NCBI RefSeq assembly: GCF_023055435.1
Contig: NW_025964223.1
Coordinates: 18,042,001-18,106,000 of the forward strand
Length of the DNA: 64,000 nucleotides
Reading direction: 5' to 3'
From: Haliotis rufescens
Taxonomy: Eukaryota
Shown here one piece after another: positions 43,341 through 61,194 of this stretch. Numbering within the stretch: position 1 is the stretch's first letter; each line of letters opens with the position of its first letter. The position numbers were made by a program, and so were the translations under genes. The notes under the pieces are model-generated. The model worked only from the letters and a program-made list of their open reading frames with translations, did no database searches and was not told the origin of the DNA.

Positions 43341-43629
43341 ACCGGATCACTGAAGCGGTCTGTAATGTATGGTATTACATATATACATTAACCATGTCCA
43401 TGCAGTCATGTTACAAATTAGGGGATATTCGTTTTCTGAATTGATATTCCTCTTGCACCACATGAAGTGATTGAAGTCATGGGGTTTGAACCCACGATCA
43501 GGAAACCATGAAAACTAGGAAAGGCATAGCGAAATAGATAAGGAGTAACAGTTACTACTGGAAAACTAGAGAAATAAAAGAAGAGTGTTGAAGAGAGAAC
43601 ACCATTAAATGTAAAAAAGGTTTATTTTT

Positions 43630-46600
43630 TTATGAAGACTCCGACACACCTCTTCTTCTAGCGCTTTTGTTAACGTTCCCCTGAAACAGACCACGGAGTG
43701 TCATAAACAAATGATACATGACACATGCAGATGTTTCAGGGTATAAATTATATATTCATTAACCATGTATGTTCAGTATAGCAGGTTTCATACTTTATAA
43801 TGTGATCATTTTCTGGTTATTATTCAAGTGATTTAGTATGGCACCCTACATACAATTTCAAGTGCCTAACATACCTAAATATGGTCATCAACAATCTATA
43901 TAAGGATATTAAGTCGTTTCAATCGTTATATCGTATGAGGTTTGAGGGATATTTTGATAATAGCATGTGAACGTACAAGAGGGCCTCTCCAAAGATCCAC
44001 GCCTCTCTTGATGATCGGACACTTTGGTTGCAGTTCCTCATGCCGGAGATAAGGATCATCAGTAGAGTCCCAGTCCAAAGCCTGGCATCCGCAGTGATAG
44101 CAAGTCAGACCGGTCCCCTTACCTGGTGGGAAGGACACATGGGAAAACTACAGATAAAAGCAAACAGATGAGTCCGACCTCAGTACCTGGAGTGGAAGGA
44201 AGCATGAGAACACTGCGGACAGAAGCAAGCAGATGAGACCAGCCTCTGCACGTGGAGTGGGAGAAAGCATGAGAACACTGCGGACAGAAGCAAGGAGATG
44301 AGACCGGCCTTCGTACCTGGAGTGGAAGGAAGCATGAGAACACTGCGGACAGAAGTAAGCAGATGACACCCTCCTCCGTACCTGGAGTGGAAGGAAGCAT
44401 GAGAACAATACAGACAGAAGCAAGTAGGTGAGACCAGCCTGTGCACGTGGAGTGGGAGGAAGCATGAGAACACTGCGGACAAGAGCAAGCAGATGAGACC
44501 GGCCTCCGTACCTGGAGTGGAAGGAAGCATGAGAACATTACAGACAGAAGCAAGCAGATGAGACCCGCCTCTGCACGTGGAGTGGAAGGAAGCATGAGAA
44601 CACTGAGGACAAGAGCAAGCAGATGAGACCGGCCTTCGTACCTGGAGTGGAAGGAAGCATGAGAACACTGCGGACAGAAGTAAGCAGATGACACCCTCCT
44701 CCGTACCTGGAGTGGAAGGGAGCATGAGAACACTGCGGACAGAAGTAAGCAGATGAGACCCGCCTCTGCACGTGGAGCGGGAGGAAGCATGAGAACACTG
44801 CGGACAAGAGCAAGCAGATGAGACTGGCCTCCGTATCTCGAGTGGAAGGAAGCATGAGAACAATGCAGACAGAAGTAAGCAGATGACACCCTCCTCCGTA
44901 CCTGGAGTGGAAGGAAGCATGAGAACAATACAGACAGAAGCAAGCAGATGAGACCGGCCTTCGTACCTGGAGTGGAAGGGAGCATGAGAACACTGCGGAC
45001 AGAAGTAAGCAGATGAGACCGGCCTCCGTACCTGGAGTGGAAGGAAGCATGAGAACAATACAGACAGAAGCAAGCAGATGAGACCGGCCTCCGTACCTGG
45101 AGTGGAAGGAAGCATGAGAACAATGCAGACAGAAGCCAACAGATGAGACCGGCCTCCGTACCTGGAGTGGAAGGAAGCATGAGAACACTGCGGACAGAAG
45201 TAAGCAGATGGCACCCTCCTCCGTACCTGGAGTGGAAGGAAGCATGAGAACAATACAGACAGAAGCAGGCAGTTGAGACCGGCCTCCGTACCTGGAGTGG
45301 AAGGAAGCATGAGAACAATACAGACAGAAGCAAGTAGGTGAGACCAGCCTCTGCACGTGGAGTGGGAGGAAGCATGAGAACACTGCGGATAAGAGCAAGC
45401 AGATGAGACCGGCCTCCGTATCTCGAGTGGAAGGAAGCATGAGAACAATACAGACAGAAGCAAGTAGGTGAGACCAGCCTGTGCACGTGGAGTGGGAGGA
45501 AGCATGAGAACACTGCGGACAAGAGCAAGCAGATGAGACCGGCCTCCGTACCTGGAGTGGAAGGAAGCATGAGAACATTACAGACAGAAGCAAGCAGATG
45601 AGACCCGCCTCTGCACGTGGAGTGGAAGGAAGCATGAGAACACTGAGGACAAGAGCAAGCAGATGAGACCGGCCTTCGTACCTGGAGTGGAAGGAAGCAT
45701 GAGAACACTGCGGACAGAAGTAAGCAGATGACACCCTCCTCCGTACCTGGAGTGGAAGGGAGCATGAGAACACTGCGGACAGAAGTAAGCAGATGAGACC
45801 CGCCTCTGCACGTGGAGCGGGAGGAAGCATGAGAACACTGCGGACAAGAGCAAGCAGATGAGACTGGCCTCCGTATCTCGAGTGGAAGGAAGCATGAGAA
45901 CAATGCAGACAGAAGTAAGCAGATGACACCCTCCTCCGTACCTGGAGTGGAAGGAAGCATGAGAACAATACAGACAGAAGCAAGCAGATGAGACCGGCCT
46001 TCGTACCTGGAGTGGAAGGGAGCATGAGAACACTGCGGACAGAAGTAAGCAGATGAGACCGGCCTCCGTACCTGGAGTGGAAGGAAGCATGAGAACAATA
46101 CAGACAGAAGCAAGCAGATGAGACCGGCCTCCGTACCTAGAGTGGAAGGAAGCATGAGAACAATGCAGACAGAAGCCAACAGATGAGACCGGCCTCCGTA
46201 CCTGGAGTGGAAGGAAGCATGAGAACACTGCGGACAGAAGTAAGCAGATGACACCCTCCTCCGTACCTGGAGTGGAAGGAAGCATGAGAACAATACAGAC
46301 AGAAGCAGGCAGTTGAGACCGGCCTCCGTACCTGGAGTGGAAGGAAGCATGAGAACAATACAGACAGAAGCAAGTAGGTGAGACCAGCCTCTGCACGTGG
46401 AGTGGGAGGAAGCATGAGAACACTGCGGACAAGAGCAAGCAGATGAGACCGGCCTCCGTATCTCGAGTGGAAGGAAGCATGAGAACAATGCAGACAGAAG
46501 CCAACAGATGAGACCGGCCTTCGTACCTGGAGTGGGAGGAAACATGAGAAGAATGCAGACAGCGCGCAGCGCAGACCTGGTATGGATGAACACTTAATGG

Positions 46601-47055
46601 ATAGTTAATTTGGAAACATATATGCGATCACATGCACTGTCAATAGGCAACTCTCCTTTATACTTTATATATCAGAAAAAATAGTATCAGTGTGTGTGAA
46701 TTAGGCTTTTCACCCAGGCTTATAGTCTAACACATCAGCTACTGATGTTACCTGTATGGTAGAACCCTGCCGCGGCTATAGTCTCTAGCCTACTAGATGT
46801 CATGTCCGAGATTTCTTCACCAGCCTCCAGCAAGGTTTCGATTCGCTCTCTCAGGGTCATCCAAACACGAGGGTACCTGGAGGGACGCTGGGATATCAGT
46901 GCCACCATCTCCTGTAGGTTCATCTGGTGACTCGGTCTCATCCCCGCCAAGACTTGGGAGATGATCTCACGCCAATCACGAGTGAAGGCGCGAGGAATTG
47001 AGCGTAAGTCACTGTCCAGAAGGTAGGGGTATTTTCCGCGGAAATTAGGACGCAT
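43630..47055 (-). CDS. BIR-only protein, ~166 aa; exons 47055-46752, 44122-43977, 43680-43630
   Basis: RERIETL..IAAAGFYHT/G joins in phase 1 to KGTGLTCYHCGCQALDWDSTDDPYLRHEELQPKCP (C-x2-C-x16-H-x6-C). Terminal exon GNVNKSARRRGVSESS* is followed directly by AATAAA (plus-strand 43621-43626). CDS 501 nt. Confidence 0.85.
44125..46560. repeat. Intronic minisatellite, 65-bp unit, ~37 copies, with a 1040-bp (16-unit) higher-order duplication
   Basis: Unit agcatgagaacactgcggacagaagcaagcagatgagaccggcctccgtacctggagtggaagga. The variant order at ~44400-45440 recurs at +1040. Confidence 0.97.
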
Positions 47056-48042
47056 TTGGCTGAAATCACACATAAGAAAAACACATTAATCAAAATATTA
47101 ATCAGAAATAGCAATGGTCCAAGGCGCTTCCTCGTGTCAAGTCAAGTATCAAAGTATCTTCTCAAACTATGTGTCAGGAGAGAGAGAAAACATATCATTT
47201 TAGCATGTAACATATTATTTAGTATTTACTTATTCTGATTTGGGCAGAGATTTCTTGTTAGTATGGACAAGGGTTAGTCGCTTCTACATGTTTAAATGAC
47301 ATGAGGCATGACCCCATGCGTTTAATCCATTGTAAAGGCAAATATCTAGGATATATCGCACAGCCACGTAGCGCTATTTTCATTTACAGAAGCAATTACA
47401 AATTCCAGTTTGACCGCTGCGCATGTCATTTCAAGCATGTGTACAGATGAGGCGTTTTTTGAAAGTTCTCTTTTTTAATGCTATTTTAGTTATAGTATAC
47501 AACTTGGTATATTGATTGATAAATATATTGTTTGATATTTTGTCTGCAAAACTATACCAGGCACTGTTTGAAAATGAGTAAGTTTTGATATCGCTTACCT
47601 CAATGCTTCTGCGGGTAAATACCGTTTGAAGAACGAGCATGGTATGGATTTCTTTATCCGGCCGGTGAGCTGTGTATAATAATAGAATTGACGTGTCGTT
47701 GTCACACTATCACATGCAGGTATTGTAAGCGTGATGCATGACACACTTATATCTTCTCACCCAACTATTGATGTGGTCGACCTATTTCTAGGTGTTATAT
47801 TTCAAGAATTTCTAAGACGTTTAACCTTTGAATAGCATTGTTTAATCATAACAAGACATGTAATTTACCTTTTCCCTGAGCGTGTCTATATTTGTAACTA
47901 ACATTTGTTAAATCTTCTGGGCAGTTGTGATATTTTTGTTTAAATGAGTCGAATTCAAAGGATATTCTATATATAGGTAATGTAAGAGTGCATGTATGAG
48001 TCGCACGACTCTCCCACGACATAACTGACGCTATTGCCATTA

Positions 48043-48790
48043 GTGACGGCAGTGTAAAGAAGGCGACTAAGGGTAGTGACAGGCGTAGGAAGAGTACGAC
48101 TAGGAGTAATGACGACCGTGGGCCTGGGAGGAGTGACGGCCATAGCAAGAAGGCGACTAAGGGTAGTGACAGGCGTAGGAAGAGTACGACTAGGAGTAAT
48201 GGCGACCGTGGGCCTGGGAGGAGTGACGGCAGTATAAAGAAGGCGACTGGGGGTAGTGACAGGCGTAGGAAGAGTACGACTAGAAGTAATGGCGACCGTG
48301 GGCCTGGGAGGAGTGACGGCAGTATAAAGAAGGCGACTGGGGGTAGTGACAGGCGTAGGAAGAGTACGACTAGAAGTAATGGCGACCGTGGGCCTGGGAG
48401 GAGTGACGGCTATATGAAGAAGGCGACTGAGAGTAGTGACGCGTAGGAAGAGTAAGACTAGGAGTAATGACGACCGTGTGCCTGGGAGGAGTGACGGCCA
48501 TAAGGAGAAGGCGACTGAGAGTAGTGACAGGCGTAGGAAGAGTACGACTAGGAGTAATGACGACCGTGGGTCTGGTTGGAGTGACGGCCATAGGAAGAAG
48601 GCGACTGAGGCTAGTGACGGGCGTAGGAAGAGTACGACTAGGAGTAATGACGACCGTGGGCCTCGGAGGAGTGACGGCAGTGTAAAGAAGGCGACTGAGG
48701 GTAGTGACACCCGTAGGAAGAGTACGACTAGGAGTAACGACGACCGTGGGCCTGGGAGGAGTGACGGCTATATGAAGAAGACGACTTAGT
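48043..48790. repeat. Minisatellite, 90-bp unit, ~8 copies
   Basis: gtgacggc recurs at 48043, 48133, 48223, 48313, 48403, 48491 and onward. Confidence 0.95.
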
Positions 48791-48890
48791 GACTGATAAA
48801 AGTTTTGAATGTTACACATTGTACCCCTGTGGGTAATCGAACCCGCGTATTTGGCGTGACGAGCGAACACTTTAACCACTAGGCTACCCC
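48787..48890 (-). mobile_element. Short tRNA-derived SINE fragment
   Basis: cattgtaccc..aatcgaaccc..ttggcgtgacgagcgaac..taaccactaggctaccc. Confidence 0.75.
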
Positions 48891-49417
48891 ATCCCCCCTT
48901 TAAATGTAGGATTAACTCTGGTTGTTACACTGGTTTGTTTTATGGGTATGGTATGCTCCCATAATGTTGAGGTTTTCATCATTAAAACGTCAATATCTTC
49001 GGGGTATTCATTTTTTTCTATTTTAAACTCATACACCCATGAAACGTCGTACACATATAATAATGAAAACATGTGTTAAGGAAACGTTGCAGAAAAACCT
49101 CTTCACGAAAATCAAGGTCATTATAGATACGTCACCTGAATTCATAAAGGAAATGAATTTACAACAGTTGAAAATAGAAGGTAGGGGTAATGAAAAGTGC
49201 AAATCATCTGAGTGAGAAAATATTGATTTCATGCCTTTTCTATTAAACTTTAATCAGCAACTATACAACGTGGCTACTCTTCCATTACTCTAAGAGATGA
49301 TTTACATAATACTTAGATAAATGATGAGCTGCGGGACACACATTCCAGTATCACTTTGTAAATATATGTATACATCCGTTAAAATCTGTTATCTCATTGT
49401 GCCTGCTCGGCGGGTTG

Positions 49418-49578
49418 TATAAATATATCGCCACGACATGTACAGTTATAGTGTTGGGGTTAAATACACACGTCAGACACAAACAAACTGGGGAAGTTTT
49501 GTTGCCTGCTGTGTATAACAACATCCTGCATACTATAAGCTAAGCAAATACATGCTTAACCCCAGCCTACAGGTAAGG
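49418..49578 (+). promoter_or_regulatory. Probable TATA and non-coding exon 1 of the plus-strand BIR-only gene
   Basis: TATAAATA at 49418, strong donor cag|gtaagg at 49573, acceptor ccacag ending 51203 before ATG 51231. Confidence 0.55.
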
Positions 49579-49607
49579 ACTGTGCTCTTTTATTTGTATA
49601 TGATACA

Positions 49608-49870
49608 GACCCTTGAAGATGTTGGGTAGAATAGGTCTTAAACAACCCATACTTGTCATAAAAGGCGACTGTGCTTGTCGTAAGAGGCGACTAACGGGAT
49701 GGGGTGGTCAGGCTCGCTGACTTGGTCGATGCATGTCATCGTATCCCAATGCGTGGTTCTATGCTCATGATATCAGTCACTGGATTGTCTGGTCCTCGAT
49801 TATTTACAGACCACCGATATATAGCTGGACTATTGTTGAGTGGTGTGTTAAACAACAAACAAACAAACAA
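49608..49870 (+). mobile_element. Deu/Nin-domain SINE
   Basis: cttgtcgtaagaggcgactaacgggatggggtggtcaggctcgctgacttgg core and (AAAC)n tail. Confidence 0.85.
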
Positions 49871-50459
49871 ATACATATAATACTGCATTGTACACATGTT
49901 ATTTAAAGTTGAGACGCGGTTATGACGTCACTCTATTGTTGCAACTGAAGATTATCTGTAACGAAGTTACAGTGTACTAACCTACAACATGCAATAATTT
50001 TAAGCATGTGAATTACGAGTGTTCTTGCTACAACGACCAATTGACACAAAATACACATGCAGTACGAATATACGGGCGAGTTCAAATGAAGCACGGGTAT
50101 CCAAACCTAATGTTTAAAGATTCTCGTTTAATTTTTCATTATTCATTGATATATATTAATTTTCATGCTGTATGTTGAATTTGATTACGCAGTATTTTGT
50201 TATTTGATGCCGTATTTTAAGTCAAATAACATACGCGTAACTGAACATTCTTTACAAATAACGATCGCTGGTTCGTACATGTTTTGAAACGGATGTCCAG
50301 TTATTTGTGGGTAATCCTTATCCATACCGAAACGACACACAAGGGTTGACAAATATAAATACCTTTCCGAGAAGCTCGAAATAGTCTGAAGACTTCGTCT
50401 GATCTATTATATCTGATCTGATGTGATATGCCTAATGGTCTCAGCAGTTGGAGAATTAA

Positions 50460-50690
50460 GAGTGAGCGAGTGAGTGAGTTGGGTTGGAAAGCCCGAAGTG
50501 ATGCAGGTCTCAGACGTTTAACCACTTCGGTGAAACCCACGAACACGTGTATGGTGCTGACAAACCTAGAAACATCATCGGGGCACACCGGGATTCGAAC
50601 CCACAATCATAGGTTTCTGGCGTACCAAAGGGATGCAACTCTGCACAGCGAATCCCGGCGCCTTAGACGACTGGGCCACCCGTGCCCCCG
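50460..50690 (-). mobile_element. tRNA-derived SINE with long A-B box spacing
   Basis: Minus strand reads gggtggcccagtcgtctaaggcgcc...gtgggttcgaatccc. Second copy at 54497-54766; decayed copies near 230, 5190 and 7785. Confidence 0.8.
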
Positions 50691-51230
50691 GGAGAACTAA
50701 GAGACGTACATGATTTGTTACTGTTGTGAGCGGGATTGCTCCACGGCATTTTGTTTGTTGTCAGGGCTAGGTCAAGACGCTGTAGTCATGCCCTGTCTGA
50801 AACTGAGACCCTTTATGTATTTAATTAAGGAAATCATTTACTGTGAGCATAAGTTACAATGTGCAATTTCAGCTGAGAAACGAAGGGTTGATTCAAAGTT
50901 GCAGTGTCTTTCCAATGTTCCTGCAGTAAAATGATACGGTCTGATGCTGTTCAGAAAGGGATGCACGAGTGAACATGACTGTGACCTGTTTCACTTGTGA
51001 TACGAGATAGACGAAACAATGTAAATACTTGTGAAATGAAATACAAACACGTTACACATAATGAAAGCCACCGATTTATAATATTTATATATAACATTAC
51101 ACCTAGTCCCTCTTTAAACAGATTAGGATCATATATTCTTCTTTAGTCGTTCAGCAAATCTGAAACCAGTAATTCCAGCAAGAGTATTGTCTTGTGTCCA
51201 CAGAAAATCGTAAGGTTTCGTGATTCAACA

Positions 51231-52928
51231 ATGAACAGATCCACTGGCAGACATCAGAGTTATGAATGCGAAGATGTTGGAGGGATTCTCAGCGATTTTA
51301 TGAACGCAAAACTGCAGGAACCGTACGCCCACTGCAACGTGGAATGCATCGGATTGACGCTGAGACAGAAGATGCTGCTGTTATACCAACCACCAACATC
51401 CAAACCGCAACATCGTCGTCTGTGGAATACAGAGGACAGACTCGACACACTGATGGCAGCTACAGACAATATTGCTGACATTCCTGCTGCTGGACTCGCT
51501 ACCATTGCTCAAGCAGGCTTCTTCCACTCAGGTAGAGTTTAAAACCTGTGCATACAACATTGTTGAGATATATTAGTACATACTTTTGTTATGTAAATGT
51601 CATCCTCTATGAAGACAGCCGCCGTGATATTGCTGGAATATTGCTAAAAGCGGCATAAAACCATACTCACTTTTAAGATAACATTATATCCCAAATAATT
51701 CTATCATAATAGATACCATGGACTTATGCTTCACCACAGCTTCGGTTAGAGTCCGATTCAAATGTCACATGCTTAATAACCGTCCAATCCAATTACACTC
51801 ATGTTATGTCGGATCTTAATGATCTGAGAAATGAAGATGTTACGTCAACTCATATACAACTGGCACATGTTCCGATTTAAGGATGCGCAAATAGAATATT
51901 GGGAGATATTCCTATTCAGGTTTTCTATCCGCAGGGACTGATAACACCTTGACGTGTTTCTCCTGTGGCTGCCACGCCCACGGTTGGAGTGTTGACGATG
52001 ATCCCTGGAGGCGACATGCGGAGCTGCAGATGACGTGCCCGGTGTTGTGCAGGAACGTCTACACACAAATCAAGGAAGGGGTAAATGACTATGAGTGAGT
52101 GAGTGAGTATGCTTTTACGCCGCCTTTAGCAATATTCCAGCAATATCACGGCGAGGGACACCTGAAATGACTATGAAATATGCCGTCTCCATATCGTACC
52201 GAATCTACATTAGACCATTATGAACACGTTTCAAACCTCTAAGCTGAACACCGTCGTTGGTTTACCTCCTATGTATATATTATGCTTTAGCTGATGACCG
52301 TGTATCCCTTATTGAAAGATTCGTACTGAACAACTACAGCATGTTGGATAGAAAAAGCCGTCGAACAATTTCTAAAATGTGTTTTGTATAAATAAGTGAC
52401 ACAGACCCGATTTAGCGTTTCTCACCATCATACTGACAAATGCAGTATTAACATTAGACTAGCATTCAGTCTTAAAATCGTATATTACACAATATCCTTC
52501 TTGACTCTAAAAATATAAAAATAAAAATTTCCCTATGCTGATTTCATAGAGAGCTAGCTATATCTGGCTAGACTTGCTTTTGTATGCGTTTCTAGATTAT
52601 TATTTTTTCATAAAATAAATATATTCAACAATCATGGTGCAGGGCTATATTTACATCAACACAAACCTTCTGTTCATTGTGTGTTTGGCGAAGTTAGTAT
52701 CTGCGCTCAAAACCTTAAGTTAGAAAGGGTTTTTTTAATCAGTGTGGTTAAACATTAAATGGCATGTAAGAAGAGGGGATACTTCTGCAAACGTTTATCA
52801 GCCTGTGCCAATATTCCTCATCAGGTGACCTCATGTTGCAGAGCATCGCCTACAGGCCCAGGACACGCCATTTCTCGGATAGTGGCGCAAGTCCACCACC
52901 TGCCAGCTATACCAGAACTCTTCACTAG
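51231..52928 (+). CDS. BIR-only protein, paralogue of the 43630-47055 gene; exons 51231-51531, 51935-52080, terminal exon uncertain (52842-52928, 52825-53088 or 53159-53221)
   Basis: EDRLDTL..IAQAGFFHS/G joins TDNTLTCFSCGCHAHGWSVDDDPWRRHAELQMTCP. Exon sizes 301/146 nt mirror 304/146 nt in the minus-strand paralogue. Confidence 0.8.
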
Positions 52929-54165
52929 TCAACATCTGGAATATCATAACCAACAATTGCATATAACCTTCTTTATTCTGGTTATGTTTCTTCAAAACTT
53001 GATCAAGATCACATTTCTCACAAAATTATATACACAACAATCCTATTCAGTACAAAACACCTGTACTTTCTTATGTCATCAATGCTGATGAAAATGTTTG
53101 AATTATTGTGATCGTTTATATATTGATTTCTGTCAAAATACTAACTCCTATTTCTCAGGCGTTCATTTATGAGGATTGTTCATGTCAATGTACATGTTGT
53201 ATGTGTAGGGGATATCAGTGATATGTGTGGAGACAGAGGTCTGCAAAGAGTCATCTGAATACTGAATGAAATCTAATACAAGTGAGCAAACTAATGTATA
53301 TGTACATGACCTGTATTCAAACTCGAATGCATATTGCCACTGGTTCCACACATATTTGTGTGATGACTTAATTTATGAACACGATACACCCCCACATATT
53401 TCGTGTACAATGCTTTAGGGAATGACGACCAACATAGGTAGTCCAGAAGCTGGTATCTAACATGACCATTTTAAGGTGAATACACATTTCAGTAGTCTTG
53501 AGAGAGAGAAATTTTCATGCTGTCGCGTCAAACCACATTCATTCATTTATTGCAATTCTACAAAAATACTTTTGAGATACAGAATGGATGCAAGAACATA
53601 TGAATATTTGGATTTTTAATGCACAAACAGTATATATAGTGAAATGCATCTATTCCTAAAAAATAGACTGAACGGTAGGGACATGTTTTTTACCAGGTTT
53701 TGATGAGATGTTACCCGGTTGGTCCGATCCTTGAGATGAACGAAGATCATTCTAGGTGACATTTTAATGCCTGAATGGAAAACACATTTCTATCATTATT
53801 TGTGATGCAAAACAACGAAACCCGACATTTTAAGAATAACTCACTGACTGTGACAGTTTATATAATTTCATATATATTTTTTATTCATTAATAAAACTGA
53901 ACAAATTTTAAACTTTGAAGTGAAATTGGTTCCTTGTTAATAAAATATTGTACTTATAGCAAAATATGTTGACAAATACGAAACTCACTTTACAGAAATT
54001 GAAGAAATAAAACAAATTTGTAATTGAATAAGTGGATTTACGGGTTACAATTGACAAATGAATCACTATGAATCTAATTAAATTTCTAAAACAATTTCGG
54101 AATAAATGATATATTGCAGCTTGTGTCCTCGTTTCCTTCTATGACAATTGTTACCGAAACATCCG

Positions 54166-54270
54166 TGACGTCAGATTCTATATTTAGTACATACGTGTTC
54201 ACGGAAAATAGATAGATTCCATGTTGGTGAGAGACGTGACGTGGATCCATGTACACCTGCGTATAACATA
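54166..54270 (+). promoter_or_regulatory. Candidate promoter of RING-only gene 1
   Basis: Full CRE TGACGTCA at 54166, gacgtgacgt at ~54233, TATA-like TATAACATA at 54262. Confidence 0.45.
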
Positions 54271-54319
54271 GTGGTAGTGTGTGGGAGCATCACATCCACC
54301 AAACACTCACGTCGTCAAG

Positions 54320-56801
54320 ATGCTGTCCGCACTGTTGCTGGTTGTTCTCGGGCTGTACACAGGTGAGGATCTTGTATAACAGTTACATACATACTGTTGC
54401 ATAACGTCTTGTCACATTCACTGTCTCCGTGGTCTTGTGGTAGTGCGTCCGCCCGTAGAGCGGAAGGTCCGGGGTTCGATCCCCGGCCGCGTATAGAGTG
54501 TGAGTGAGTTGGGTTTAACGCCGCTTTAAACAGTATTCCAGTTATATCACGGCGTGTCAGCTTAATGTGGGAGGAAAGCCCGAGGTGATGCAGGTCTCAG
54601 ACGGTTACTTCTTCGGTGAAACCCACGAGCACGGGTATGGTGCTGACATATAGTTGGGGCGAACCGGAATTCGAACCCACAATCATAGGTTTCTGCCGTG
54701 CCCAAGGGACGCAACTCTGCACAGCAAATCGCGGCGCCCTAGACGACTGGGTCACCCGTGCCCCCGACTGAATATAGACACTGGCCGTAACACAGATACT
54801 CGAAGGAAAAGTATGTAAAATAATGTATCTGTATGGGTTAACCTAGTGATTAGATTAACAGTGATTTTGATTATATAGACTATATTCATTCCCACGGGAG
54901 TCAACCGTCTATATGTGTGATTACACATTATATACCGGGTGATTGTTTCTGCTTCAATGCCAATTTGGAGTTACAAAGGTATTCAACATTCTCTTTGAAA
55001 CAACTATAAAGGGGAATGTAATAACCAGACACATTAGCTTATTTACATGTTACCTCCATGAAATATCCGAAACCCGAGTTGAGAGTCGAACCACCCTATC
55101 CAAAGGACCTGAGGTTGGTCCCGTCAGCAAGGTACATGTGTGTAACACCATCTTGAGGACAAATGTGGATGGTACTGCTACGTAAAATAATATTTTTTTC
55201 GAAATCTACTTGATCGATTGATTGGATATTCTGTGTATATTTATGCATTATACATACAGTCAAACGCACACGCACACGCACACGCACACGCACACGCACA
55301 CGCACATGCACATGCACAACCACGCACACACACAAACTCTTGCACATTGCAAAAGGCTATAAGCTAGATGTAGTATTTCCTGACTGAAAACGGACAAACA
55401 CATTCGATTATACAATGTAAGATATAACAAACTGAGGTTCTCATTGAATTCAAGCACTTCTAACGTCATGCATTGCAACATGAGGTGTAATTCTTAGATC
55501 ACGCTAAGGTGAGTGAATATGGTTTTACACCGCTTTTAGCAATAGTCAAGTAATATCACAGGGGGGGACACCATAAAATCACTGAGGATCGGTGAGGTGG
55601 CCTAGTGGTTAATGAGCTCGCTCGTCGCGCCGAAACCTCGGTTTCGGCTCCCCACATAGGTACAATGTGTGAAGACCATTTCTGGTGTCCCCCGCCGTGA
55701 TATTGTTGGAATATTGCTAAAAACCACATTCACTCACTCACTCACTCACTCACTCGATCGCATGAGAATGAGTGAATAACATCATTTCAGGCTTATTAAG
55801 ACGGCGAACATTAGAAATGGGCATCACCTATTGTTCGGCTTGAGTCACCGATTTGACCACTAGGCTACCCCCTTCTACCTTGATTACGAAAGAAAATTGT
55901 AAGACAGGTGACGGTTGTTTTAAAATTTGACTTCGAAATTAAGGTTATATTTGGGTTGGGCAGTAGAAGGCTTATTCTTTCAAATTTTACATTGACAATG
56001 CACACATTTGTGCCAAAAGACATTCACCTGAGCAAATCGCGCATATTCACATTTAAACAAGGACATGTTTCTAAGTGCGTAACGTTTCGTGGACGTGGTT
56101 ACCGTGTGGTTCAAGCTTTTGCCAAGACTCCACTCATGGGTACAATGTGTAAAGCCCACATCTGATATTTTCTGTTGGCGATATTACTGTATGTACAACA
56201 CTGATCCATAGATATGGAGATTACCAAATCACTCCCCACCCCCTCCATCCACCCTTCCAACACCCCAACACCCACCATCCTACATCAAATGGGGGCGTGG
56301 GGCTGGTGAGGCAGTTGTCAAAGGCTAAAATATTTACCGTGGAGAAATGTTCGAATCCCGGTTCGCTCGGATTTCTTTTCCAGCTTTGTCATCACAACTA
56401 ATTAAGCCCGACATCACTTAGGGCTTTCCTTCCATATTGGGAGCCTTAACCATTTACTTTTATGTGAAAATAGAAGTAAAGAAAGTAAATCATATGTAAG
56501 TAATGTGTTGGCAGGCGTATCATCGGTTTACTTGTAGTATTGCCTTACTGTCGCAGGTGTAGGAGAGGATGGGTCCACACAAAAAGCAGCCGGCCACAAA
56601 CCCAAAGGGGGATCACAGAGATCACACTCCCGGAAGTGGGGAAAGTGTAGGCGGTGCAAGGTGCGCAATGTCAACACAGTGTTCCTGCCGTGCGGTCACG
56701 TGGTGTGTTGTGCTGAGTGCAGCGTCGTCTCCAGGACGTGTGACGTATGCCATGCACGAATCAGAGGCAGTCTCAGAACCAGCCCATTACATGGGGATTA
56801 A
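54320..56801 (+). CDS. Hydrophobic-leader + IAP-type RING microprotein, ~95 aa; exons 54320-54362 and 56557-56801
   Basis: Exon 1 MLSALLLVVLGLYT/G (donor ag|gtgagg, phase 1) joins in frame to VGEDGSTQK..RKWGKCRRCKVRNVNTVFLPCGHVVCCAECSVVSRTCDVCHARIRGSLRTSPLHGD*. The RING exon is solid, though missed by the ORF track in this frame; the exon 1 join is inferred. Confidence 0.65.
54497..54766 (-). mobile_element. tRNA-derived SINE abutting a truncated Meta-SINE head (54424-54493, plus)
   Basis: Same family as 50460-50690. Confidence 0.8.
55263..55335. repeat. (GCACAC)n microsatellite
   Basis: Directly visible. Confidence 0.9.
55588..55755 (+). mobile_element. Short tRNA-derived SINE
   Basis: ggtggcctagtggttaa..ggtacaatgtgtgaag..ggaatattgctaaaa..(CACT)n. 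Confidence 0.8.
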
Positions 56802-57380
56802 TATGTCATTTAAAATATGATATGTATGGTGCTACAATTGAACAGTCTAGTATTTACTCTGGTTTCCTTTCGAAATAATATACATTCATACAAATCCAAA
56901 ATGTATGCATTGAATGCAGATGTGAGATGTATTTAAACATTTTTAATGTTTAGTGTATTCATTATATTAAGTTGATATATTGATTGAGAAAATATATGTT
57001 ATGGTTACTTAACTGTAGATAATAAAATACTGTACAGATTAACTAATTCCTGTGTTTTGTTTTGTGTTGAAAGTTAATATACCGCACCATGCATAGATTC
57101 AATGCAGGTAACATAGATGCATGTATTATGGAAATGTTCCGTTTTATTTGTATTGGTCTGCATTGAATAATTACAAGAGAGGATTTTAACAAGATAAATA
57201 ACACAACAGTAGTGGAATGTCGCATTTATGTGTACAAACGAAAAACGCTATTTTTAATACCTAATTGCAAATGCCAAAAGAAACTTTACCATAGTTTTAA
57301 ATCACTCTTTAAAAAACACAAAAGATAGATGCATGAAGTAAAATTGGTTGAAAGTTCAAAATCTCAACATAAACAATTAA

Positions 57381-57549
57381 GAGTGAGTGAGTGAGAATGG
57401 TTTTACGCCGCTTTTAGCAATATTCCAGCAACATGATGGCGGGGGACACCAGAAATGGGCTTCCAACATTGTACCCATGTCGGGAATCGAACCCGGGTCT
57501 TTGGCGTGACGAGCGAACGCACTAACCACTAGGCTACCCGACCGCCCCC
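57381..57549 (-). mobile_element. Short tRNA-derived SINE, full length, with apparent target-site duplication
   Basis: Complete head and tail; flanked on both sides by aacaattaaga (57372-57382 and 57550-57560). Confidence 0.88.
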
Positions 57550-57859
57550 AACAATTAAGATGACAGCTTTAACAGCATTTGATATTGGCATGACAGTTGC
57601 CCGAATTGAGGTGGGGTAACAAACAAAACATATTTTCAACGTAGTGGACAAAGGGCACGCACGTCTAAAAATCACTCACGTTCAATGACTCGTCACATTC
57701 ATAATGTGTCTGACCACCTCCTGCTACAAGACACGCAAAACCTCTCCGGTCCAAAGAAAAAGTCAGTCGTCTGATGACGTCACTTGGGACAACTCGACAT
57801 TCTTCTTGGAGGGTGATCTATGACATCCCAGGGGTGTTCTGTGGTGGACGTGTCTGGGG

Positions 57860-58440
57860 AACGTGCAGGCCAATGCAATATGTTGCGTTGTTCCACGTGG
57901 CAGCTGTTGTAGTAATGGTAGGGCAATCGGACAAAGCATCTCATCCACGAAAAGCTGAGTTAAATGTTCGTTAACGATGACAAGCGGTGTTCTCTCCTTC
58001 TCACAAATTCGTCCCCACATCATAACACATCATCCACCATACGGTACGACCTCTTGAACGCAACACGCCGCCGTTCCTTCTCCCGTTCGGCGGTAAACAC
58101 ACTTTCTGTCACGTCGCTGCCAACGGCGAACAGTCCGGGTCCATCTCAATGTCTGAAGACGATGTTGCGCTGTCAATAACTGTCCTCTGTTAGGTTTGTA
58201 AGCCCTAATGTCTTGAGCTCGGAGTCGCCTGGCCACTGTCAGTCGACTAACCATATGCCCTAAGGCATTCGTCGCTGATGACGTCACTTTCAGGGATCGA
58301 TCCCGGAGATGCAATGTACGCAAGTACCGGTCTTCATTAGGCGTAGTTACCCTGGGTCTCCCTGTTCGCGGTCTGTCTGATGTATGCCCGGTCTGTCTGT
58401 AACGTTGCAACAGGTTAGTTACAGCTACATGGAAGCAACC
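57860..58440 (-). mobile_element. Degenerate Tc1/mariner transposase
   Basis: RPRTGRPRVTT..EDRYLR..VSRLTVARRLR HTH region followed by VYRR..GG*CVMMWG..RTPLVIV. Stop codon and deletions present. Confidence 0.88.
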
Positions 58441-58449
58441 AACAGTCAG

Positions 58450-58672
58450 ACGTACATGTGTGTTCACTATCTTCACCCGTCCACTCAGTCAGAAGTACAT
58501 GTGTGTTCACTATCTTCACTCGTCCACTCAGTCAGAAGTACATATGTGTTTATTATCTTCACCCGTCCACTCAGTCATAAGAACATATGTGTTCATTATC
58601 TTCACCCGTCCACTCAGTCATAAGAACATATGTGTTTATTATCTTCTCCCGTCCACTCAGTCATAAGAACAC
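58450..58672. repeat. Short tandem array, ~43-bp unit, ~5 copies
   Basis: acatgtgtgttcactatcttcacccgtccactcagtcagaagt repeated. Confidence 0.9.
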
Positions 58673-59887
58673 GATTTTCCTCCGGTCAATCAGTCGGAAA
58701 TACTCGTGTGTTCATTATCTGAGAAAATATAATTCGGTTTTCATTATATACCCTATACCATTTATACAAAAAACAACCAGTGTTCCATAATGCCAATTAC
58801 ACATCTGCTACTACAAACGGACATTTTGTTAAACACACTTTTATAGAAATATTATGTAACACTTGCATGATTGAGGGTAAGCGTCTTCCACATGTTGTAA
58901 TTCTTTATTTGCGTTCGTCACCACTCGACCCTTTCCGTAACCTGCAAGAAGACTCGTTCGTTCCCCTATTGATGAATGTTATGTGCGAAAATACGACAAA
59001 CCAATCAGAATGCGCGTATGATTTCAAGTTCTTCGTCAAAGAATCCCTCAGAAATAATTTCTGATTTTACATATATCTTGCATCTAAAAATATACCAAAG
59101 ACACAGTTAAATGTGTTCAATCATACTGTATAATTCCGCACGTCCCGATGTGCTTTAAATTGCATCTGAAATATACATAATATATGGGGAAAATGTGTGA
59201 ACCATTACGTAACGAGTTGACAATTATATTAGGTATGCCCGTTTGCGCCAAGACGGAATTCGGTTGCAAAATAGCCATGAGAAGGGCACGAGTCGCTATT
59301 CGGCTTGTCCCGGAATAACACGAGTTGGTCACGAATGTCCTTATTTAGTATCCATTGCGGTCTTAGGTTAAGACAAGAATTCGGAGTGAGAACGTGTGCA
59401 ATCAGGAATGGTTGAAAAACGTTGGGATTGGATCCTTTAAACCGTCTGTTATGAATAATTGTCTTGATGAGTACTTATGTATAATCACATTTGTTTTTTA
59501 AGTGTCATTTGTCTCTGGACAATGAACACAACATTACTATGTAATACATGAATCAATATGTATCAGAACAACTCTGACGAAGTTGTCTATGAAGAGAAAG
59601 AGTTAATGATCATCACTGATCATTTATGGGCGGAAACATCTGAACGCATAATGTATTATTTCATCACAACTTTCATAATATTTCTTTAGATAGATACAGA
59701 AAACAAGTTGCGGAATGTAAGGTTTTCAGAATGATCGAAGAACCGTTGAACTATTGATTATGGTCAATGATCTATAACTTTCTAATGACCTTTTTACAAA
59801 CGAATGGACTCATTCTCACACACGATGCATGAGTATCGGATGTATGTGTAACTATTAGTATCAGAGGGATTAATCACTCATTAGCAA

Positions 59888-60055
59888 GGGAAAACCACAG
59901 TGCGTAAATATACTGATGACGTTGGGCTATAAATACCGACAAGTGACTGTTGACTAACCCACTGTGAGGTTAGTCCCTCATAACAGTCACACATCTCGGG
60001 CGGCGTGCAACGTGTGGAGGTACAGTTAACGACGAGTTAACTCCCTTAGGTAAGC
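59888..60055 (+). promoter_or_regulatory. Promoter and non-coding exon 1 of RING-only gene 2
   Basis: kB-like GGGAAAACCA at 59888, TGACGT at 59917, TATAAATA at 59928. ATG-free exon ends at donor tag|gtaagc (60050); acceptor ccag ends at 60266. Confidence 0.65.
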
Positions 60056-60280
60056 ACAAGCTGCAGTACAACCTCAGTGTTATGTGAATGTACTTCCAAT
60101 AGTAGACTGATGCCTATGAAACCATGGCCATCACTCACTTTCATAGAACATTTCAAAATCTAACACTATTGTGCTGAATACGTGTAAAATGATGTTATAT
60201 AATGTGTATGGTATGCATTGTGCACACAGAGATGCATGATCATGCACTTGTGTTGTCTGACGCCAGGTGCACATCGGAGG

Positions 60281-60493
60281 ATGTCAGCTGACTCTGTCAA
60301 ATCTGGTTACGGTAAAAGACCCCGTACTTCATCTCACCGGAAGCATGGGAAGTGTCGGTCATGTCGGCAGAAAGACGTGTGTCTTGTGTTTCTACCCTGT
60401 GGTCACGTGGTGTGTTGTGATGACTGCGGCGCGTCCCTCAACACGTGTGTGGTGTGTGACCGACCCATCAGGGGCAGTATCAGAACCTATTGA
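60281..60493 (+). CDS. IAP-type RING-only microprotein, 70 aa
   Basis: MSADSVKSGYGKRPRTSSHRKHGKCRSCRQKDVCLVFLPCGHVVCCDDCGASLNTCVVCDRPIRGSIRTY*. Intact C3HC4 with IAP-like tail; AATAAA near 60714. Confidence 0.82.
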   Translation: MSADSVKSGYGKRPRTSSHRKHGKCRSCRQKDVCLVFLPCGHVVCCDDCGASLNTCVVCDRPIRGSIRTY

Positions 60494-61194
60494 TGTCACA
60501 GACCCCCATACACAGTGAAAGCTCTGTGATGCCACCAGGAACTGCAGCAGAACTTTGTATGAGTTAGTCTCTCTTTGTGTCATTAAATGAAGTCTTTGAT
60601 AGACATTTAAAAGTTGCAAGAACATGCCCACATAACATTTTATAATGGATAATATTGTACACTTTATTCTTTGTTCCGAAATGTTATGTATTTATAACAA
60701 AATTATATAATTCAATAAATATGTAAATTTCGTCATTTCACTATTATTGTTTCAGAGACATATATTTAGGTTTATAGCGAGTTTCTTGCCGCGCGTTTGC
60801 TCTTCTTTAAATACGGAGGAGCACTATCCAGTGTATCACGATTGTATGCTTCAATAATTCATACATTCAAATCAACTGGGGTTCAAGTGTTATAAGCTTT
60901 GTCAGATTTGGTACTTAATTCTAATGAAATACCAAATTATAACTCCAGCATTAAATATATTGTTTTTTTATAAGTGAAGTCTTATTAAGCCTTTTTCAAT
61001 AACACCCATGTTTTCTGTATTGTAACAGGAACCATGGCAGATAACATGTACTATCTGACATTCTTGGAATTTGATGTATGTATTTGACATATAACATTAC
61101 TTTACAACAATCGCATCTGCAGTTCTCTCCTGCATTCATGCCACCTGTGAGGCAGTATACGCTCACCTGGTATCATCACTATTTCACGGTGATT

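What the first reader, a model, noticed from the sequence alone, without database searches (positions are those of the whole stretch)
43630..60493. A 'split IAP' module: two BIR-only genes followed by two RING-only mini-genes beside full-length IAPs
Seen: two paralogous single-BIR genes without UBA or RING (one with its own terminal exon and polyA signal), then two paralogous RING-only exons. At least one RING gene has its own TATA/kB/CRE promoter and non-coding first exon. All zinc ligands are intact despite strong divergence, which argues for selection rather than decay. Established: IAP RINGs act through dimerisation using the C-terminal tail, and BIRs bind caspases or IBM-bearing antagonists. 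Inference: the cluster encodes separately regulated substrate-binding and E3 modules that could act as decoys, dominant-negatives or combinatorial partners of the full-length IAPs.
Basis: partly seen in the sequence, partly recalled or inferred. Interest (0 to 1): 0.88.

Follow-up and report, generated by a model that had tools for sequence, protein, structure and literature searches.

The report
Separate BIR-only and RING-only abalone genes
In a red abalone apoptosis-inhibitor (IAP) gene cluster, the caspase-binding BIR part and the ubiquitin-ligase RING part sit in separate small genes; this extends the domain loss already known in mollusc IAPs, and no function has been tested.

Summary
The window is Haliotis rufescens (G000:C445, 18.04-18.11 Mb).

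- **BIR-B (+, 51.2-54.1 kb):** spliced RNA contigs from three studies show a BIR-only mRNA. It has three exons here, encodes 177 aa, stops at 52926, and carries a long 3'UTR that ends about 220 bp before RING1's start codon. No listed joint reaches a RING exon.
- **BIR-A:** it lies on the minus strand, head-to-head with BIR-B, and has the same three-exon build (166-172 aa). I had no RNA data for it.
- **RING1:** it is not a lone exon. It has no in-frame ATG and needs a 14-codon hydrophobic first exon (54320-54362), giving 95 aa. A paralogue 25 Mb away and a 92-aa H. rubra RefSeq model both conserve that exon. RING1 against its paralogue gives dN/dS 0.25.
- **RING2:** a coherent 70-aa ORF, with no transcript evidence.
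- **Wider pattern:** RefSeq models of the paralogous genes are also BIR-only (161-203 aa) or RING-only (92-193 aa). A third BIR gene of this type lies just right of the window.
- **RING residues:** every RING-only RING keeps its zinc ligands. All lack the E2-contact hydrophobic residue, the CPxC proline and the linchpin arginine, which the neighbouring long IAPs keep. This fits a non-catalytic partner or decoy better than an autonomous E3.

Function is untested. I rate it a new variant of a known kind.

The parts
46752..47073 (-). BIR-A first coding exon. ATG at 47073 (alternative at 47055). It holds the N-terminal region and the first half of the BIR, and ends at a phase-1 donor CAG|GTAACA.
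   Evidence: Sequence read. Model built locally. 37% aa identity to BIR-B exon 1. No RNA data.
44107..46562 (.). 65-bp x 37.8 tandem array that fills intron 1 of BIR-A and abuts the exon-2 acceptor.
   Evidence: Tandem Repeats Finder.
43977..44122 (-). BIR-A exon 2, the zinc-binding half of the BIR. Phase-1 acceptor and phase-0 donor CTT|GTACGT.
   Evidence: (Pfam BIR, E 1.6e-7).
43621..43680 (-). BIR-A short terminal exon: 16 codons, stop at 43630-43632, AATAAA at 43626-43621.
   Evidence: The model gives a protein of 166-172 aa. No RNA data.
51204..51531 (+). BIR-B first coding exon (ATG at 51231). At least 110 nt of non-coding exon lies upstream of it, at an unknown position.
   Evidence: Spliced RNA contigs X1 record 1 and X3 record 15, and the X2 joint. 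Sequence.
51935..52080 (+). BIR-B exon 2, the zinc-binding half of the BIR. Phase-0 donor GGG|GTAAAT.
   Evidence: GT..AG joints 51528>51932 (three runs) and 52079>52841 (two runs). Pfam BIR E 5.6e-8.
52842..54103 (+). BIR-B terminal exon: 28 codons, TAG at 52926-52928, then about 1.2 kb of 3'UTR with AATAAA/ATTAAA signals at 53890-54101.
   Evidence: Contigs tile 52841-54103. Translation gives 177 aa. PolyA signals.
54320..54362 (+). RING1 coding first exon: ATG plus 14 hydrophobic codons and a phase-1 donor CAG|GTGAGG. TGACGTCA and TATA-like motifs lie 130-150 bp upstream.
   Evidence: tblastn with the N-terminus of XP_046548285.1. Sequence. The exon and donor are conserved in the paralogue. 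Single-copy in the genome. Unspliced contig X2 record 10 covers it.
56557..56801 (+). RING1 second exon: linker plus C3HC4 RING, stop at 56799-56801, AATAAA at 57021. The model gives a 95-aa protein.
   Evidence: dN/dS of 0.25 against the paralogue. Exact 125-nt RNA contig X3 record 20.
59928..60049 (+). Putative RING2 promoter (TATAAATA at 59928-59935) and an ATG-free non-coding first exon ending at TTAG|GTAAGC. This part is hypothetical.
   Evidence: Sequence only. Single-copy in the genome. No RNA data.
60267..60493 (+). RING2 coding exon: phase-1 acceptor, ATG at 60281, 70-aa RING-only ORF, TGA at 60491-60493, AATAAA at 60714.
   Evidence: zf-C3HC4_3, E 4.6e-11. Closest solved relatives are the cIAP2, cIAP1 and BIRC7 RINGs.

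Best explanation
The locus holds four separate small genes (five with the BIR gene just outside the window). They derive from IAP genes by partial duplication or gene fission.

Two are single-BIR proteins of 166-177 aa, BIR-A and BIR-B. Each has three coding exons, and the last is a short exon of its own with a polyA signal.

Two are RING-only microproteins. RING1 (95 aa) starts with a 14-residue hydrophobic segment encoded by its own first exon. RING2 (70 aa) has a basic N-terminus.

Shown: BIR-B is transcribed and spliced as a BIR-only mRNA. The exon phases do not allow BIR exon 2 to join a RING exon. Paralogues and orthologues in other abalones have the same split architecture. The coding sequences are under purifying selection.

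Inferred: the BIR-only proteins bind caspases or IBM-type antagonists without ubiquitylating them, acting as buffers or decoys. The RING-only proteins keep the zinc scaffold and the IRGSxR strand. They have lost the three residues that recruit and activate E2~ubiquitin, so they most likely act as non-catalytic RING partners or competitors of RING-bearing IAPs. RING1 may do this from a membrane.
For: **Species.** The genome is H. rufescens. Contig C445 is 63,335,689 bp long, the same length as the contig that carries RefSeq XP_046363315.2.

**BIR-B transcript.** One search shows the GT..AG joint 51528>51932 in three runs from three studies, and 52079>52841 in two. Contigs then run on to 54103. 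No listed joint leads into 56557. The model translates to 177 aa with a stop at 52926. On the X1 contig there are 2 differences in 531 coding nt, against 20 in the 317-nt piece that is mostly 3'UTR.

**Exon phases.** The donor after BIR exon 2 is phase 0 in BIR A, B, C, D and P. All four RING acceptors are phase 1, as in the long IAPs.

**RING1 first exon.** It was found by homology to the 92-aa H. rubra model. It has a consensus donor, is conserved in the paralogue and is single-copy.

**Selection.** RING1 against RING1L gives dN 0.19, dS 0.76 and ω 0.25 over 74 codons. The long-IAP RING pair gives ω 0.15. BIR exon 2 has saturated dS with dN 0.14-0.71, and ω is 0.12 for C against P.

**Database models.** The best hits of the RING profile among 1.84 billion representatives are short RING-only RefSeq models: XP_071114771.1 (134 aa), XP_046548285.1 (92 aa) and XP_046548280.1 (193 aa). 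The BIR-P isoforms and their H. cracherodii orthologue are 161-203 aa, carry a BIR only, and end in a 14-aa terminal exon.

**RING hallmark residues.** The RING-only genes read CxR/S/KC, CD/V/MxC, then H/D/G after the last Cys. The long IAPs and human cIAP and BIRC7 read CxI/VC, CPxC, then R. Of 148 relatives, 98 keep both the hydrophobic residue and an R/K linchpin, and only 13 have lost all three. PMC9910797 (BRCA1 I26 and K65) and PMC4864278 (linchpin Arg, BIRC7 F296) describe the role of these residues.
Against: - No spliced RNA joint was seen for RING1 (54362>56557). There is no RNA evidence at all for RING2 or BIR-A. My one read-laying run covered only 51150-57100, and it used assembled contigs, which drop rare isoforms.
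- The runs are labelled RNA only by a guess.
- X2 record 10 runs unbroken from BIR-B's 3'UTR through RING1's first exon, so read-through is not excluded.
- The exact 70-aa RING2 ORF and the 141-aa RING2L ORF are absent from the protein collection. RefSeq therefore either models them differently or does not model them.
- Loss of the E2 hallmark residues also occurs in some BIR-bearing IAPs. It is not specific to RING-only genes, and it does not prove inactivity.
- No binding, localisation or activity was tested. Complex prediction did not fold the pair.
Confidence: 0.6

Rival explanations
1. The RING exons, RING2 especially, are orphaned terminal exons left behind when BIR-RING genes gained early polyA sites or were rearranged. 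On this view they are untranscribed or non-functional relics whose intact cysteines reflect a recent origin.
For: No spliced RNA was seen for either RING, and only a 125-nt contig lies on RING1 exon 2. The RING2 ORF is not in the protein collection. RING1 has no ATG of its own in the RING exon. The catalytic hallmark residues are lost.
Against: ω is 0.25 over 74 codons, linker included, at dS 0.76. The first coding exon and its donor are conserved between paralogues. Orthologous RING-only RefSeq models exist in H. rubra and H. cracherodii. RING2 against RING2L has saturated dS with all ligands kept.
Confidence: 0.12
2. BIR-B and RING1 (or RING2) are still one ordinary BIR-RING IAP gene. A conditional isoform would skip the terminal exon or read through it, and the BIR-only mRNA would merely be the common short isoform.
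For: The order BIR-B > RING1 > RING2 is on one strand. Only about 220 bp separate BIR-B's polyA signals from RING1's ATG. X2 record 10 bridges that gap. BIR exon 1's phase-1 donor is phase-compatible with the RING acceptors.
Against: The exon-2 donor is phase 0 and conserved in five paralogues, while the RING acceptors are phase 1. Exon 3 carries a stop. In run X1, BIR-B contigs are present but no contig lies on either RING1 exon. All three RefSeq isoforms of paralogue BIR-P lack a RING. Joining exon 1 to a RING would delete the zinc half of the BIR.
Confidence: 0.1
3. The genes are separate, as in the best explanation, but the RING-only proteins are autonomous, active E3 ligases. These would be the first reader's 'E3 modules', finding substrates through their N-termini or through membrane location.
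For: The RING fold and ligands are intact, with an IAP-type IRGSxR strand. RING2 ends in Tyr at the position of BIRC7 F296. Some RINGs work with non-canonical linchpins. BRCA1 I26A keeps residual activity (PMC9910797).
Against: The CxΦC hydrophobic residue, the CPxC Pro and the linchpin Arg are lost together in all seven RING-only sequences examined, yet kept in the adjacent long IAPs. RING1's tail has Ser at the aromatic position.
Confidence: 0.15

Closest known systems
Mollusc single-BIR IAPs without a RING (IAP repertoire surveys: PMC13159474; oysters PMC8917759; hard clam PMC7831173)
   Same: One BIR and no RING, in tandem-duplicated clusters. [quoted passage not shown]
   Different: Those surveys select genes by the BIR, so they do not describe the complementary RING-only genes. 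I did not test which BIR subgroup these genes belong to. The N-terminal half of this BIR is atypical: Pfam matches only profile positions 33-69.
RefSeq models XP_046548285.1 (H. rubra, 92 aa), XP_071114771.1 (H. cracherodii, 134 aa), XP_046548280.1 (H. rubra, 193 aa), and XP_046363315.2 with its isoforms (H. rufescens BIR-only, 163-203 aa)
   Same: These are orthologues or paralogues of RING1, RING2 and BIR-A/B with the same split architecture. The 92-aa model has the same hydrophobic first exon.
   Different: They belong to the paralogous locus at 43.66 Mb, not to this window's genes (68% and 52% aa identity to RING1 and RING2). They are automatic annotations named by similarity, and no study of them turned up in my paper searches.
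Human cIAP1, cIAP2 and BIRC7 (ML-IAP) RING dimers (PDB 3EB5, 6HPR, 4AUQ)
   Same: These are the best solved matches to RING2 (E 2e-13 to 7e-10). They share the C3HC4 spacing, the FxPCGH core and the strand before the C-terminus.
   Different: The human RINGs sit at the end of BIR-containing proteins and have Val in CKVC, Pro in CPIC, the linchpin Arg and an RTFLS tail. RING1 and RING2 have R/S, D/V and H/D at those three positions, and tails that end ...RTS-PLHGD and ...RTY.
Catalytically weak RING partners such as BARD1 (with BRCA1) or MDMX (with MDM2). This is an analogy of mechanism only.
   Same: An intact RING scaffold that lacks E2-activating residues could act through dimerisation with an active RING. 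The residue roles come from PMC9910797 and PMC4864278. The MDMX example rests on my own knowledge.
   Different: There is no sequence relationship, and heterodimerisation was not tested here. Those partners are large multi-domain proteins, not 70-95-aa microproteins.
Ant two-BIR IAPs without a RING, formed by incomplete tandem duplication of a DIAP1-like gene (PMC13159474)
   Same: A RING-less IAP beside its parent gene, explained by partial duplication rather than decay.
   Different: No matching RING-only gene is reported there. In abalone both halves persist as genes at two loci.

Membership tests
IAP family (BIR-containing proteins) | A BIR domain with the Cx2Cx16Hx6-8C zinc site | tested here: met
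   The motif is present in BIR-A and BIR-B. Pfam PF00653 scores above its cut-off on the exon-2 translations. The full-length paralogue P0151 aligns with XIAP BIR2 and BIR3 and with NAIP BIR2. The joined A and B proteins were not sent to any search tool.
IAP family (BIR-containing proteins) | A canonical N-terminal half of the BIR (the RxxTFxxWP region) | tested here: inconclusive
   The exon-1 translations give no Pfam hit on their own. P0151 aligns over the whole domain only with XIAP BIR2 entries (query residues 62-142).
RING-bearing IAPs (XIAP, cIAP, DIAP1 or BIRC7 type) | BIR and a C-terminal RING in one polypeptide | tested here: not met
   BIR-B mRNA contigs end in their own exon and 3'UTR. 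The exon phases do not fit. The paralogue's isoforms lack a RING. This was not tested by RNA for BIR-A, RING1 or RING2.
IAP-type RING (Pfam zf-C3HC4_3) | Eight C3HC4 zinc ligands with IAP spacing | tested here: met
   Closest solved structures.
Catalytically competent dimeric IAP RING | A hydrophobic E2 contact in CxΦC, Pro in CPxC, and the linchpin Arg after the last Cys | tested here: not met
   RING1 has R, D and H at these positions. RING2 has S, V and D. The long IAPs in the window have I, P and R.
Catalytically competent dimeric IAP RING | A C-terminal tail with an aromatic residue (BIRC7 F296) that contacts donor ubiquitin across the dimer | tested here: inconclusive
   RING2 ends in Tyr at that position but lacks the two residues that follow it in human IAPs. 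RING1 has Ser there. The long abalone IAPs have His.
Non-catalytic RING partner (works-like claim only) | Heterodimerises with an active RING | not testable with these tools
   Complex prediction accepted the job but did not fold it.
Secreted or membrane-anchored protein (RING1 N-terminus) | A functional signal peptide or anchor | not tested
   The only support is a mean Kyte-Doolittle score of 1.6-2.1 over 15 residues and conservation in three sequences. No predictor was available.

The most novel reading that the evidence does not exclude
Abalones may run a two-component IAP system. Linked BIR-only and RING-only genes are kept together at two loci 25 Mb apart. Their products could reassemble, or the RING-only pseudo-ligases (one of them membrane-anchored) could tune the E3 output of the long IAPs by heterodimerising with them. 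Substrate binding and ligase control would then be regulated by separate promoters.
Probability: 0.15. Interest if true: 0.75.

Novelty: new variant of a known kind. Interest (0 to 1): 0.45.

Why it matters
Mollusc IAP families are hugely expanded and respond to stress and infection. How domain loss changes their function is still open. IAP surveys count only BIR-bearing genes, so conserved RING-only derivatives fall outside them.

Here both halves survive as selected genes, side by side, at two loci. The RING halves carry a consistent set of substitutions at the E2-activating positions. That yields a concrete, testable idea: small non-catalytic RINGs and RING-less BIRs act as modulators of the full-length IAPs.

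It also serves as an annotation warning. IAP-like names on 70-190-aa abalone proteins hide the fact that they have no BIR.

Tried and rejected
**Searches that gave nothing**
- The search for homologous proteins with the RING1 exon and with BIR-B exon 1 found nothing. The tool only sees proteins of similar size that share words, so these blanks say little.
- Exact look-ups of the 70-aa RING2 ORF and the 141-aa RING2L ORF: neither is in the collection.
- The search of earlier findings by words gave one unrelated-locus note.

- Complex prediction (long-IAP RING with RING2) was busy at first. It then accepted the job but did not fold it, for policy reasons. That result is no evidence either way.
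- PMC3880866 (Dou et al. 2012) is not held. I therefore took the residue roles from PMC4864278 and PMC9910797, and counted BIRC7 residue numbers from the 4AUQ alignment.

**Ideas I dropped**
- blastn and tblastx against the paralogous locus found only the RING exons and repeats. I first took the 54.3-54.5 kb match for a repeat. I dropped that idea once the H. rubra protein pointed to 54320-54362 and the stretch proved single-copy. The high-copy element starts only near 54420.
- I looked for a RING on the minus strand downstream of BIR-A, and for one within 20 kb to the right of BIR-C. There is none.

- The joined (spliced) proteins of BIR-A, BIR-B and RING1 were translated only inside local scripts. 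Whole-protein Pfam, structure prediction and exact look-ups for them are therefore missing.


Full report
**Where we are.** The window is G000:C445:18042001-18106000 of a 1.33-Gb genome. Contig C445 is 63,335,689 bp long. That is the same length as the contig carrying the RefSeq protein XP_046363315.2 of Haliotis rufescens, which matches a paralogous exon at 96% identity. The genome is therefore red abalone. The window is part of a large IAP cluster. A RING2 query hits 40 RING exons genome-wide at E <= 1e-6, many of them between 17.38 and 18.10 Mb of this contig.

**Checking the observation.**
- A six-frame motif scan finds long IAP genes at 4.6-13.4 kb and 32.2-37.6 kb, and a duplicated BIR exon at 21.8 and 27.8 kb.
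- Inside the finding it finds one BIR zinc motif on the minus strand (43929-44147), one on the plus strand (51895-52095), and two C3HC4 RINGs on the plus strand (56538-56798 and 60203-60490).
- Pfam confirms BIR on both exon-2 translations and zf-C3HC4_3 on both RINGs.
- The two BIR genes are paralogous in both exons, and the two RINGs are 49% identical. All eight zinc ligands are invariant across the RING-only and long-IAP RINGs.

**Gene models: BIR-B.**
- I laid contigs of four runs on 51150-57100. The tool labels these runs RNA only by a guess. Their contigs carry clean GT..AG intron removals, so they do hold RNA.
- X1 record 1 (907 nt) and X3 record 15 (809 nt) lie on 51204-51528, 51932-52079 and 52841-53157. 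X2 has the first joint as well. These are three runs from three studies.
- A further 110 nt at the 5' end of the X1 contig lie off the stretch. That means a non-coding first exon whose position I do not know.
- More contigs tile 52841-54103, where AATAAA and ATTAAA signals sit at 53890-54101.
- Translated locally, the model gives 177 aa: an N-terminal region, one BIR, and a 28-aa tail, with TAG at 52926.
- No listed joint leads from BIR-B into the RING1 exon.
- On the X1 contig only 2 of 531 coding positions differ from the genome (one synonymous, one Ser>Phe at 51962). Twenty differences fall in the 317-nt piece that is mostly 3'UTR. That contrast fits constraint on the coding sequence.

**Gene models: BIR-A.** It is on the minus strand, head-to-head with BIR-B and 4.1 kb away. 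Its build mirrors BIR-B:
- Exon 1 runs 47073>46752 and ends in a phase-1 donor.
- A 2.6-kb intron follows, filled by a 65-bp x 38 array.
- Exon 2 runs 44122>43977.
- A 16-codon terminal exon runs 43680>43630, with AATAAA at 43626.
- The protein would be 166-172 aa. I have no RNA data for this gene.

**Gene models: the RINGs.**
- Both RING exons begin at a phase-1 acceptor.
- RING1 has no in-frame ATG ahead of the RING, so it cannot stand alone.
- A profile of the four RING exons was searched against 1.84 billion representative proteins. The best hits covering the whole profile are three short RefSeq models: XP_071114771.1 (H. cracherodii, 134 aa), XP_046548285.1 (H. rubra, 92 aa) and XP_046548280.1 (H. 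rubra, 193 aa). None has a BIR.
- The 92-aa model starts with a 13-residue hydrophobic stretch. tblastn places its counterpart at 54320-54364 in the window and about 0.7 kb upstream of the paralogous RING exon.
- The window copy is ATG plus 14 codons plus one base, then CAG|GTGAGG. That phase matches the RING1 acceptor exactly.
- The exon and its donor are conserved between the paralogues while the flanks are not. The stretch is single-copy in the genome.
- The RING1 model is therefore 95 aa.
- RNA support is thin. One exact 125-nt contig lies in exon 2 (X3). One unspliced contig covers 54045-54369 (X2). X1 and X8 have nothing, although X1 holds BIR-B contigs.
- RING2 has ATG at 60281, 14 nt into its exon, and encodes 70 aa. 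Upstream lie a TATAAATA box at 59928 and an ATG-free stretch ending in TTAG|GTAAGC at 60049. That region is single-copy. The model is coherent, but no RNA data cover it.

**Could BIR and RING still be one gene?**
- The donor after BIR exon 2 sits at a homologous position and is phase 0 in all five members of this BIR subfamily: A, B, C (just right of the window), D (18.009 Mb) and P (43.668 Mb).
- All four RING acceptors are phase 1, as are those of the long IAPs' RING exons. A direct join would break the frame.
- RefSeq gives BIR-P three isoforms of 163-203 aa, and an H. cracherodii orthologue of 161 aa. All end in the same 14-aa terminal exon, and none has a RING.
- The shared phase-1 intron in front of the RING suggests that the RING-only genes descend from the terminal exon of an IAP gene that later gained a first exon of its own.

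**A second copy of the arrangement.** At C445:43.66-43.67 Mb, on one strand, lie a RING1-like exon (73% aa identity), BIR-P (67% to BIR-A exon 2) and a RING2-like 141-aa ORF. The two H. rubra RING-only models lie on one 580-kb contig, with accession numbers five apart. So BIR-only and RING-only genes are linked at two loci in this genome, and the RING-only pair is linked in at least one other species.

**Selection.**

| Pair | Codons | dN | dS | ω |
|---|---|---|---|---|
| RING1 vs RING1L | 74 | 0.19 | 0.76 | 0.25 |
| Long-IAP RING pair | 77 | 0.11 | 0.78 | 0.15 |
| RING2 vs RING2L | 68 | 0.52 | 2.70 (saturated) | 0.19 (unreliable) |
| BIR exon 2, C vs P | 47 | 0.14 | 1.11 | 0.12 |

For most other BIR exon-2 pairs dS is saturated while dN is 0.22-0.71. 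These are old duplicates that have kept open frames, splice sites and zinc ligands. That argues against decay. Short alignments make every one of these values rough.

**What the RINGs look like.** RING2's closest solved relatives are the cIAP2, cIAP1 and BIRC7 RINGs. Against those, and against the long IAPs in this window, all seven RING-only sequences differ at three positions.

| Position | Human IAPs and long abalone IAPs | RING-only sequences |
|---|---|---|
| Middle residue of the first CxxC | I or V | R, S or K |
| First residue inside CPxC | P | D, V or M |
| Residue after the last Cys | R | H, D or G |

- The first position corresponds to BRCA1 I26, which defines the E2 binding site (PMC9910797).
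- The third is the linchpin position: R286 in BIRC7, counted from the 4AUQ alignment. PMC4864278 and PMC9910797 describe the linchpin role.
- The tail aromatic that contacts ubiquitin across the dimer (BIRC7 F296, PMC4864278) is Tyr and C-terminal in RING2, and Ser in RING1.
- Among 148 relatives with a recognisable RING, 98 keep both the hydrophobic residue and an R/K linchpin. Only 13 have lost all three positions, and some of those 13 carry BIRs. The signature is therefore unusual but not unique to RING-only genes.
- I infer weak or absent autonomous E3 activity, and a role through RING-RING pairing or competition. This is inference only. The one complex prediction I sent was not folded.

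[quoted passage not shown] The BIR-only half of the finding is therefore ordinary. RING-only derivatives are invisible to BIR-based surveys. In abalones they exist only as automatically named RefSeq models, and my paper searches found no study of them.

**Verdict.** The split architecture is real and conserved. It has direct transcript proof for one gene of four. The functional reading as decoys or partners is plausible, and the residue pattern sharpens it, but it is untested.

**Limits.**
- Two word-based protein searches were blank.
- The spliced protein models were only translated locally and were not searched or folded.

Noticed in passing
L020:1282-2315 (equivalent to window coordinates of about 65.3-66.3 kb, plus strand): A third BIR gene of the same subfamily (BIR-C) lies just beyond the right end of the window. 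Its exon 2 is 67% identical to BIR-A's and has the same phase-0 donor. No RING motif occurs in the next 20 kb.
   Followed up: partly
G000:C445:43,645,001-43,705,000 (L014-L019): A paralogous trio sits on one strand: a RING1-like exon with the same hydrophobic first exon, BIR-P (RefSeq LOC124140022, BIR-only isoforms), and a RING2-like 141-aa ORF with a long Ser/Thr-rich N-terminus.
   Followed up: partly
L023, G000:C445:18,014,929-18,019,197, minus strand: Five copies of a long-IAP-type RING terminal exon lie in tandem at about 1,024-bp spacing, 23-27 kb to the left of the window. Four of them are nearly identical.
   Followed up: no
window 44107-46562: A 65-bp x 37.8 tandem array (85% matches) fills BIR-A's first intron and overlaps the exon-2 acceptor by about 15 nt. 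It gives long spurious ORFs on the minus strand.
   Followed up: partly
window 48042-48786: A 90-bp x 8.3 tandem array (91% matches) lies in the spacer between the divergent BIR-A and BIR-B genes. BIR-B's unlocated 5' non-coding exon may also lie in that spacer.
   Followed up: no
window 51548-51746, 52092-52170, 54420-54770, 55509-55750: High-copy elements, at least one with a tRNA-like GGTTCGATCCC box, show summed contig depths of 10^4-10^5 in all four runs. They break contigs next to the exons.
   Followed up: no
window 51962: RNA contigs of runs X1 and X2 carry C>T, which changes Ser to Phe in the CFSCG motif of BIR-B's zinc site region. X3 matches the genome. This may be an allele or a species difference.
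   Followed up: no
window 22898-23164 and 28891-29157: Duplicated exons encode a RING-like domain that is only about 33% identical to the IAP RINGs and lacks the standard C3HC4 pattern. They lie downstream of the duplicated BIR exons at 21.8 and 27.8 kb.
   Followed up: no
P0001: The top-scoring representative is a 1177-aa protein with 21 separate matches to the RING profile and no standard RING pattern. I did not examine it.
   Followed up: no
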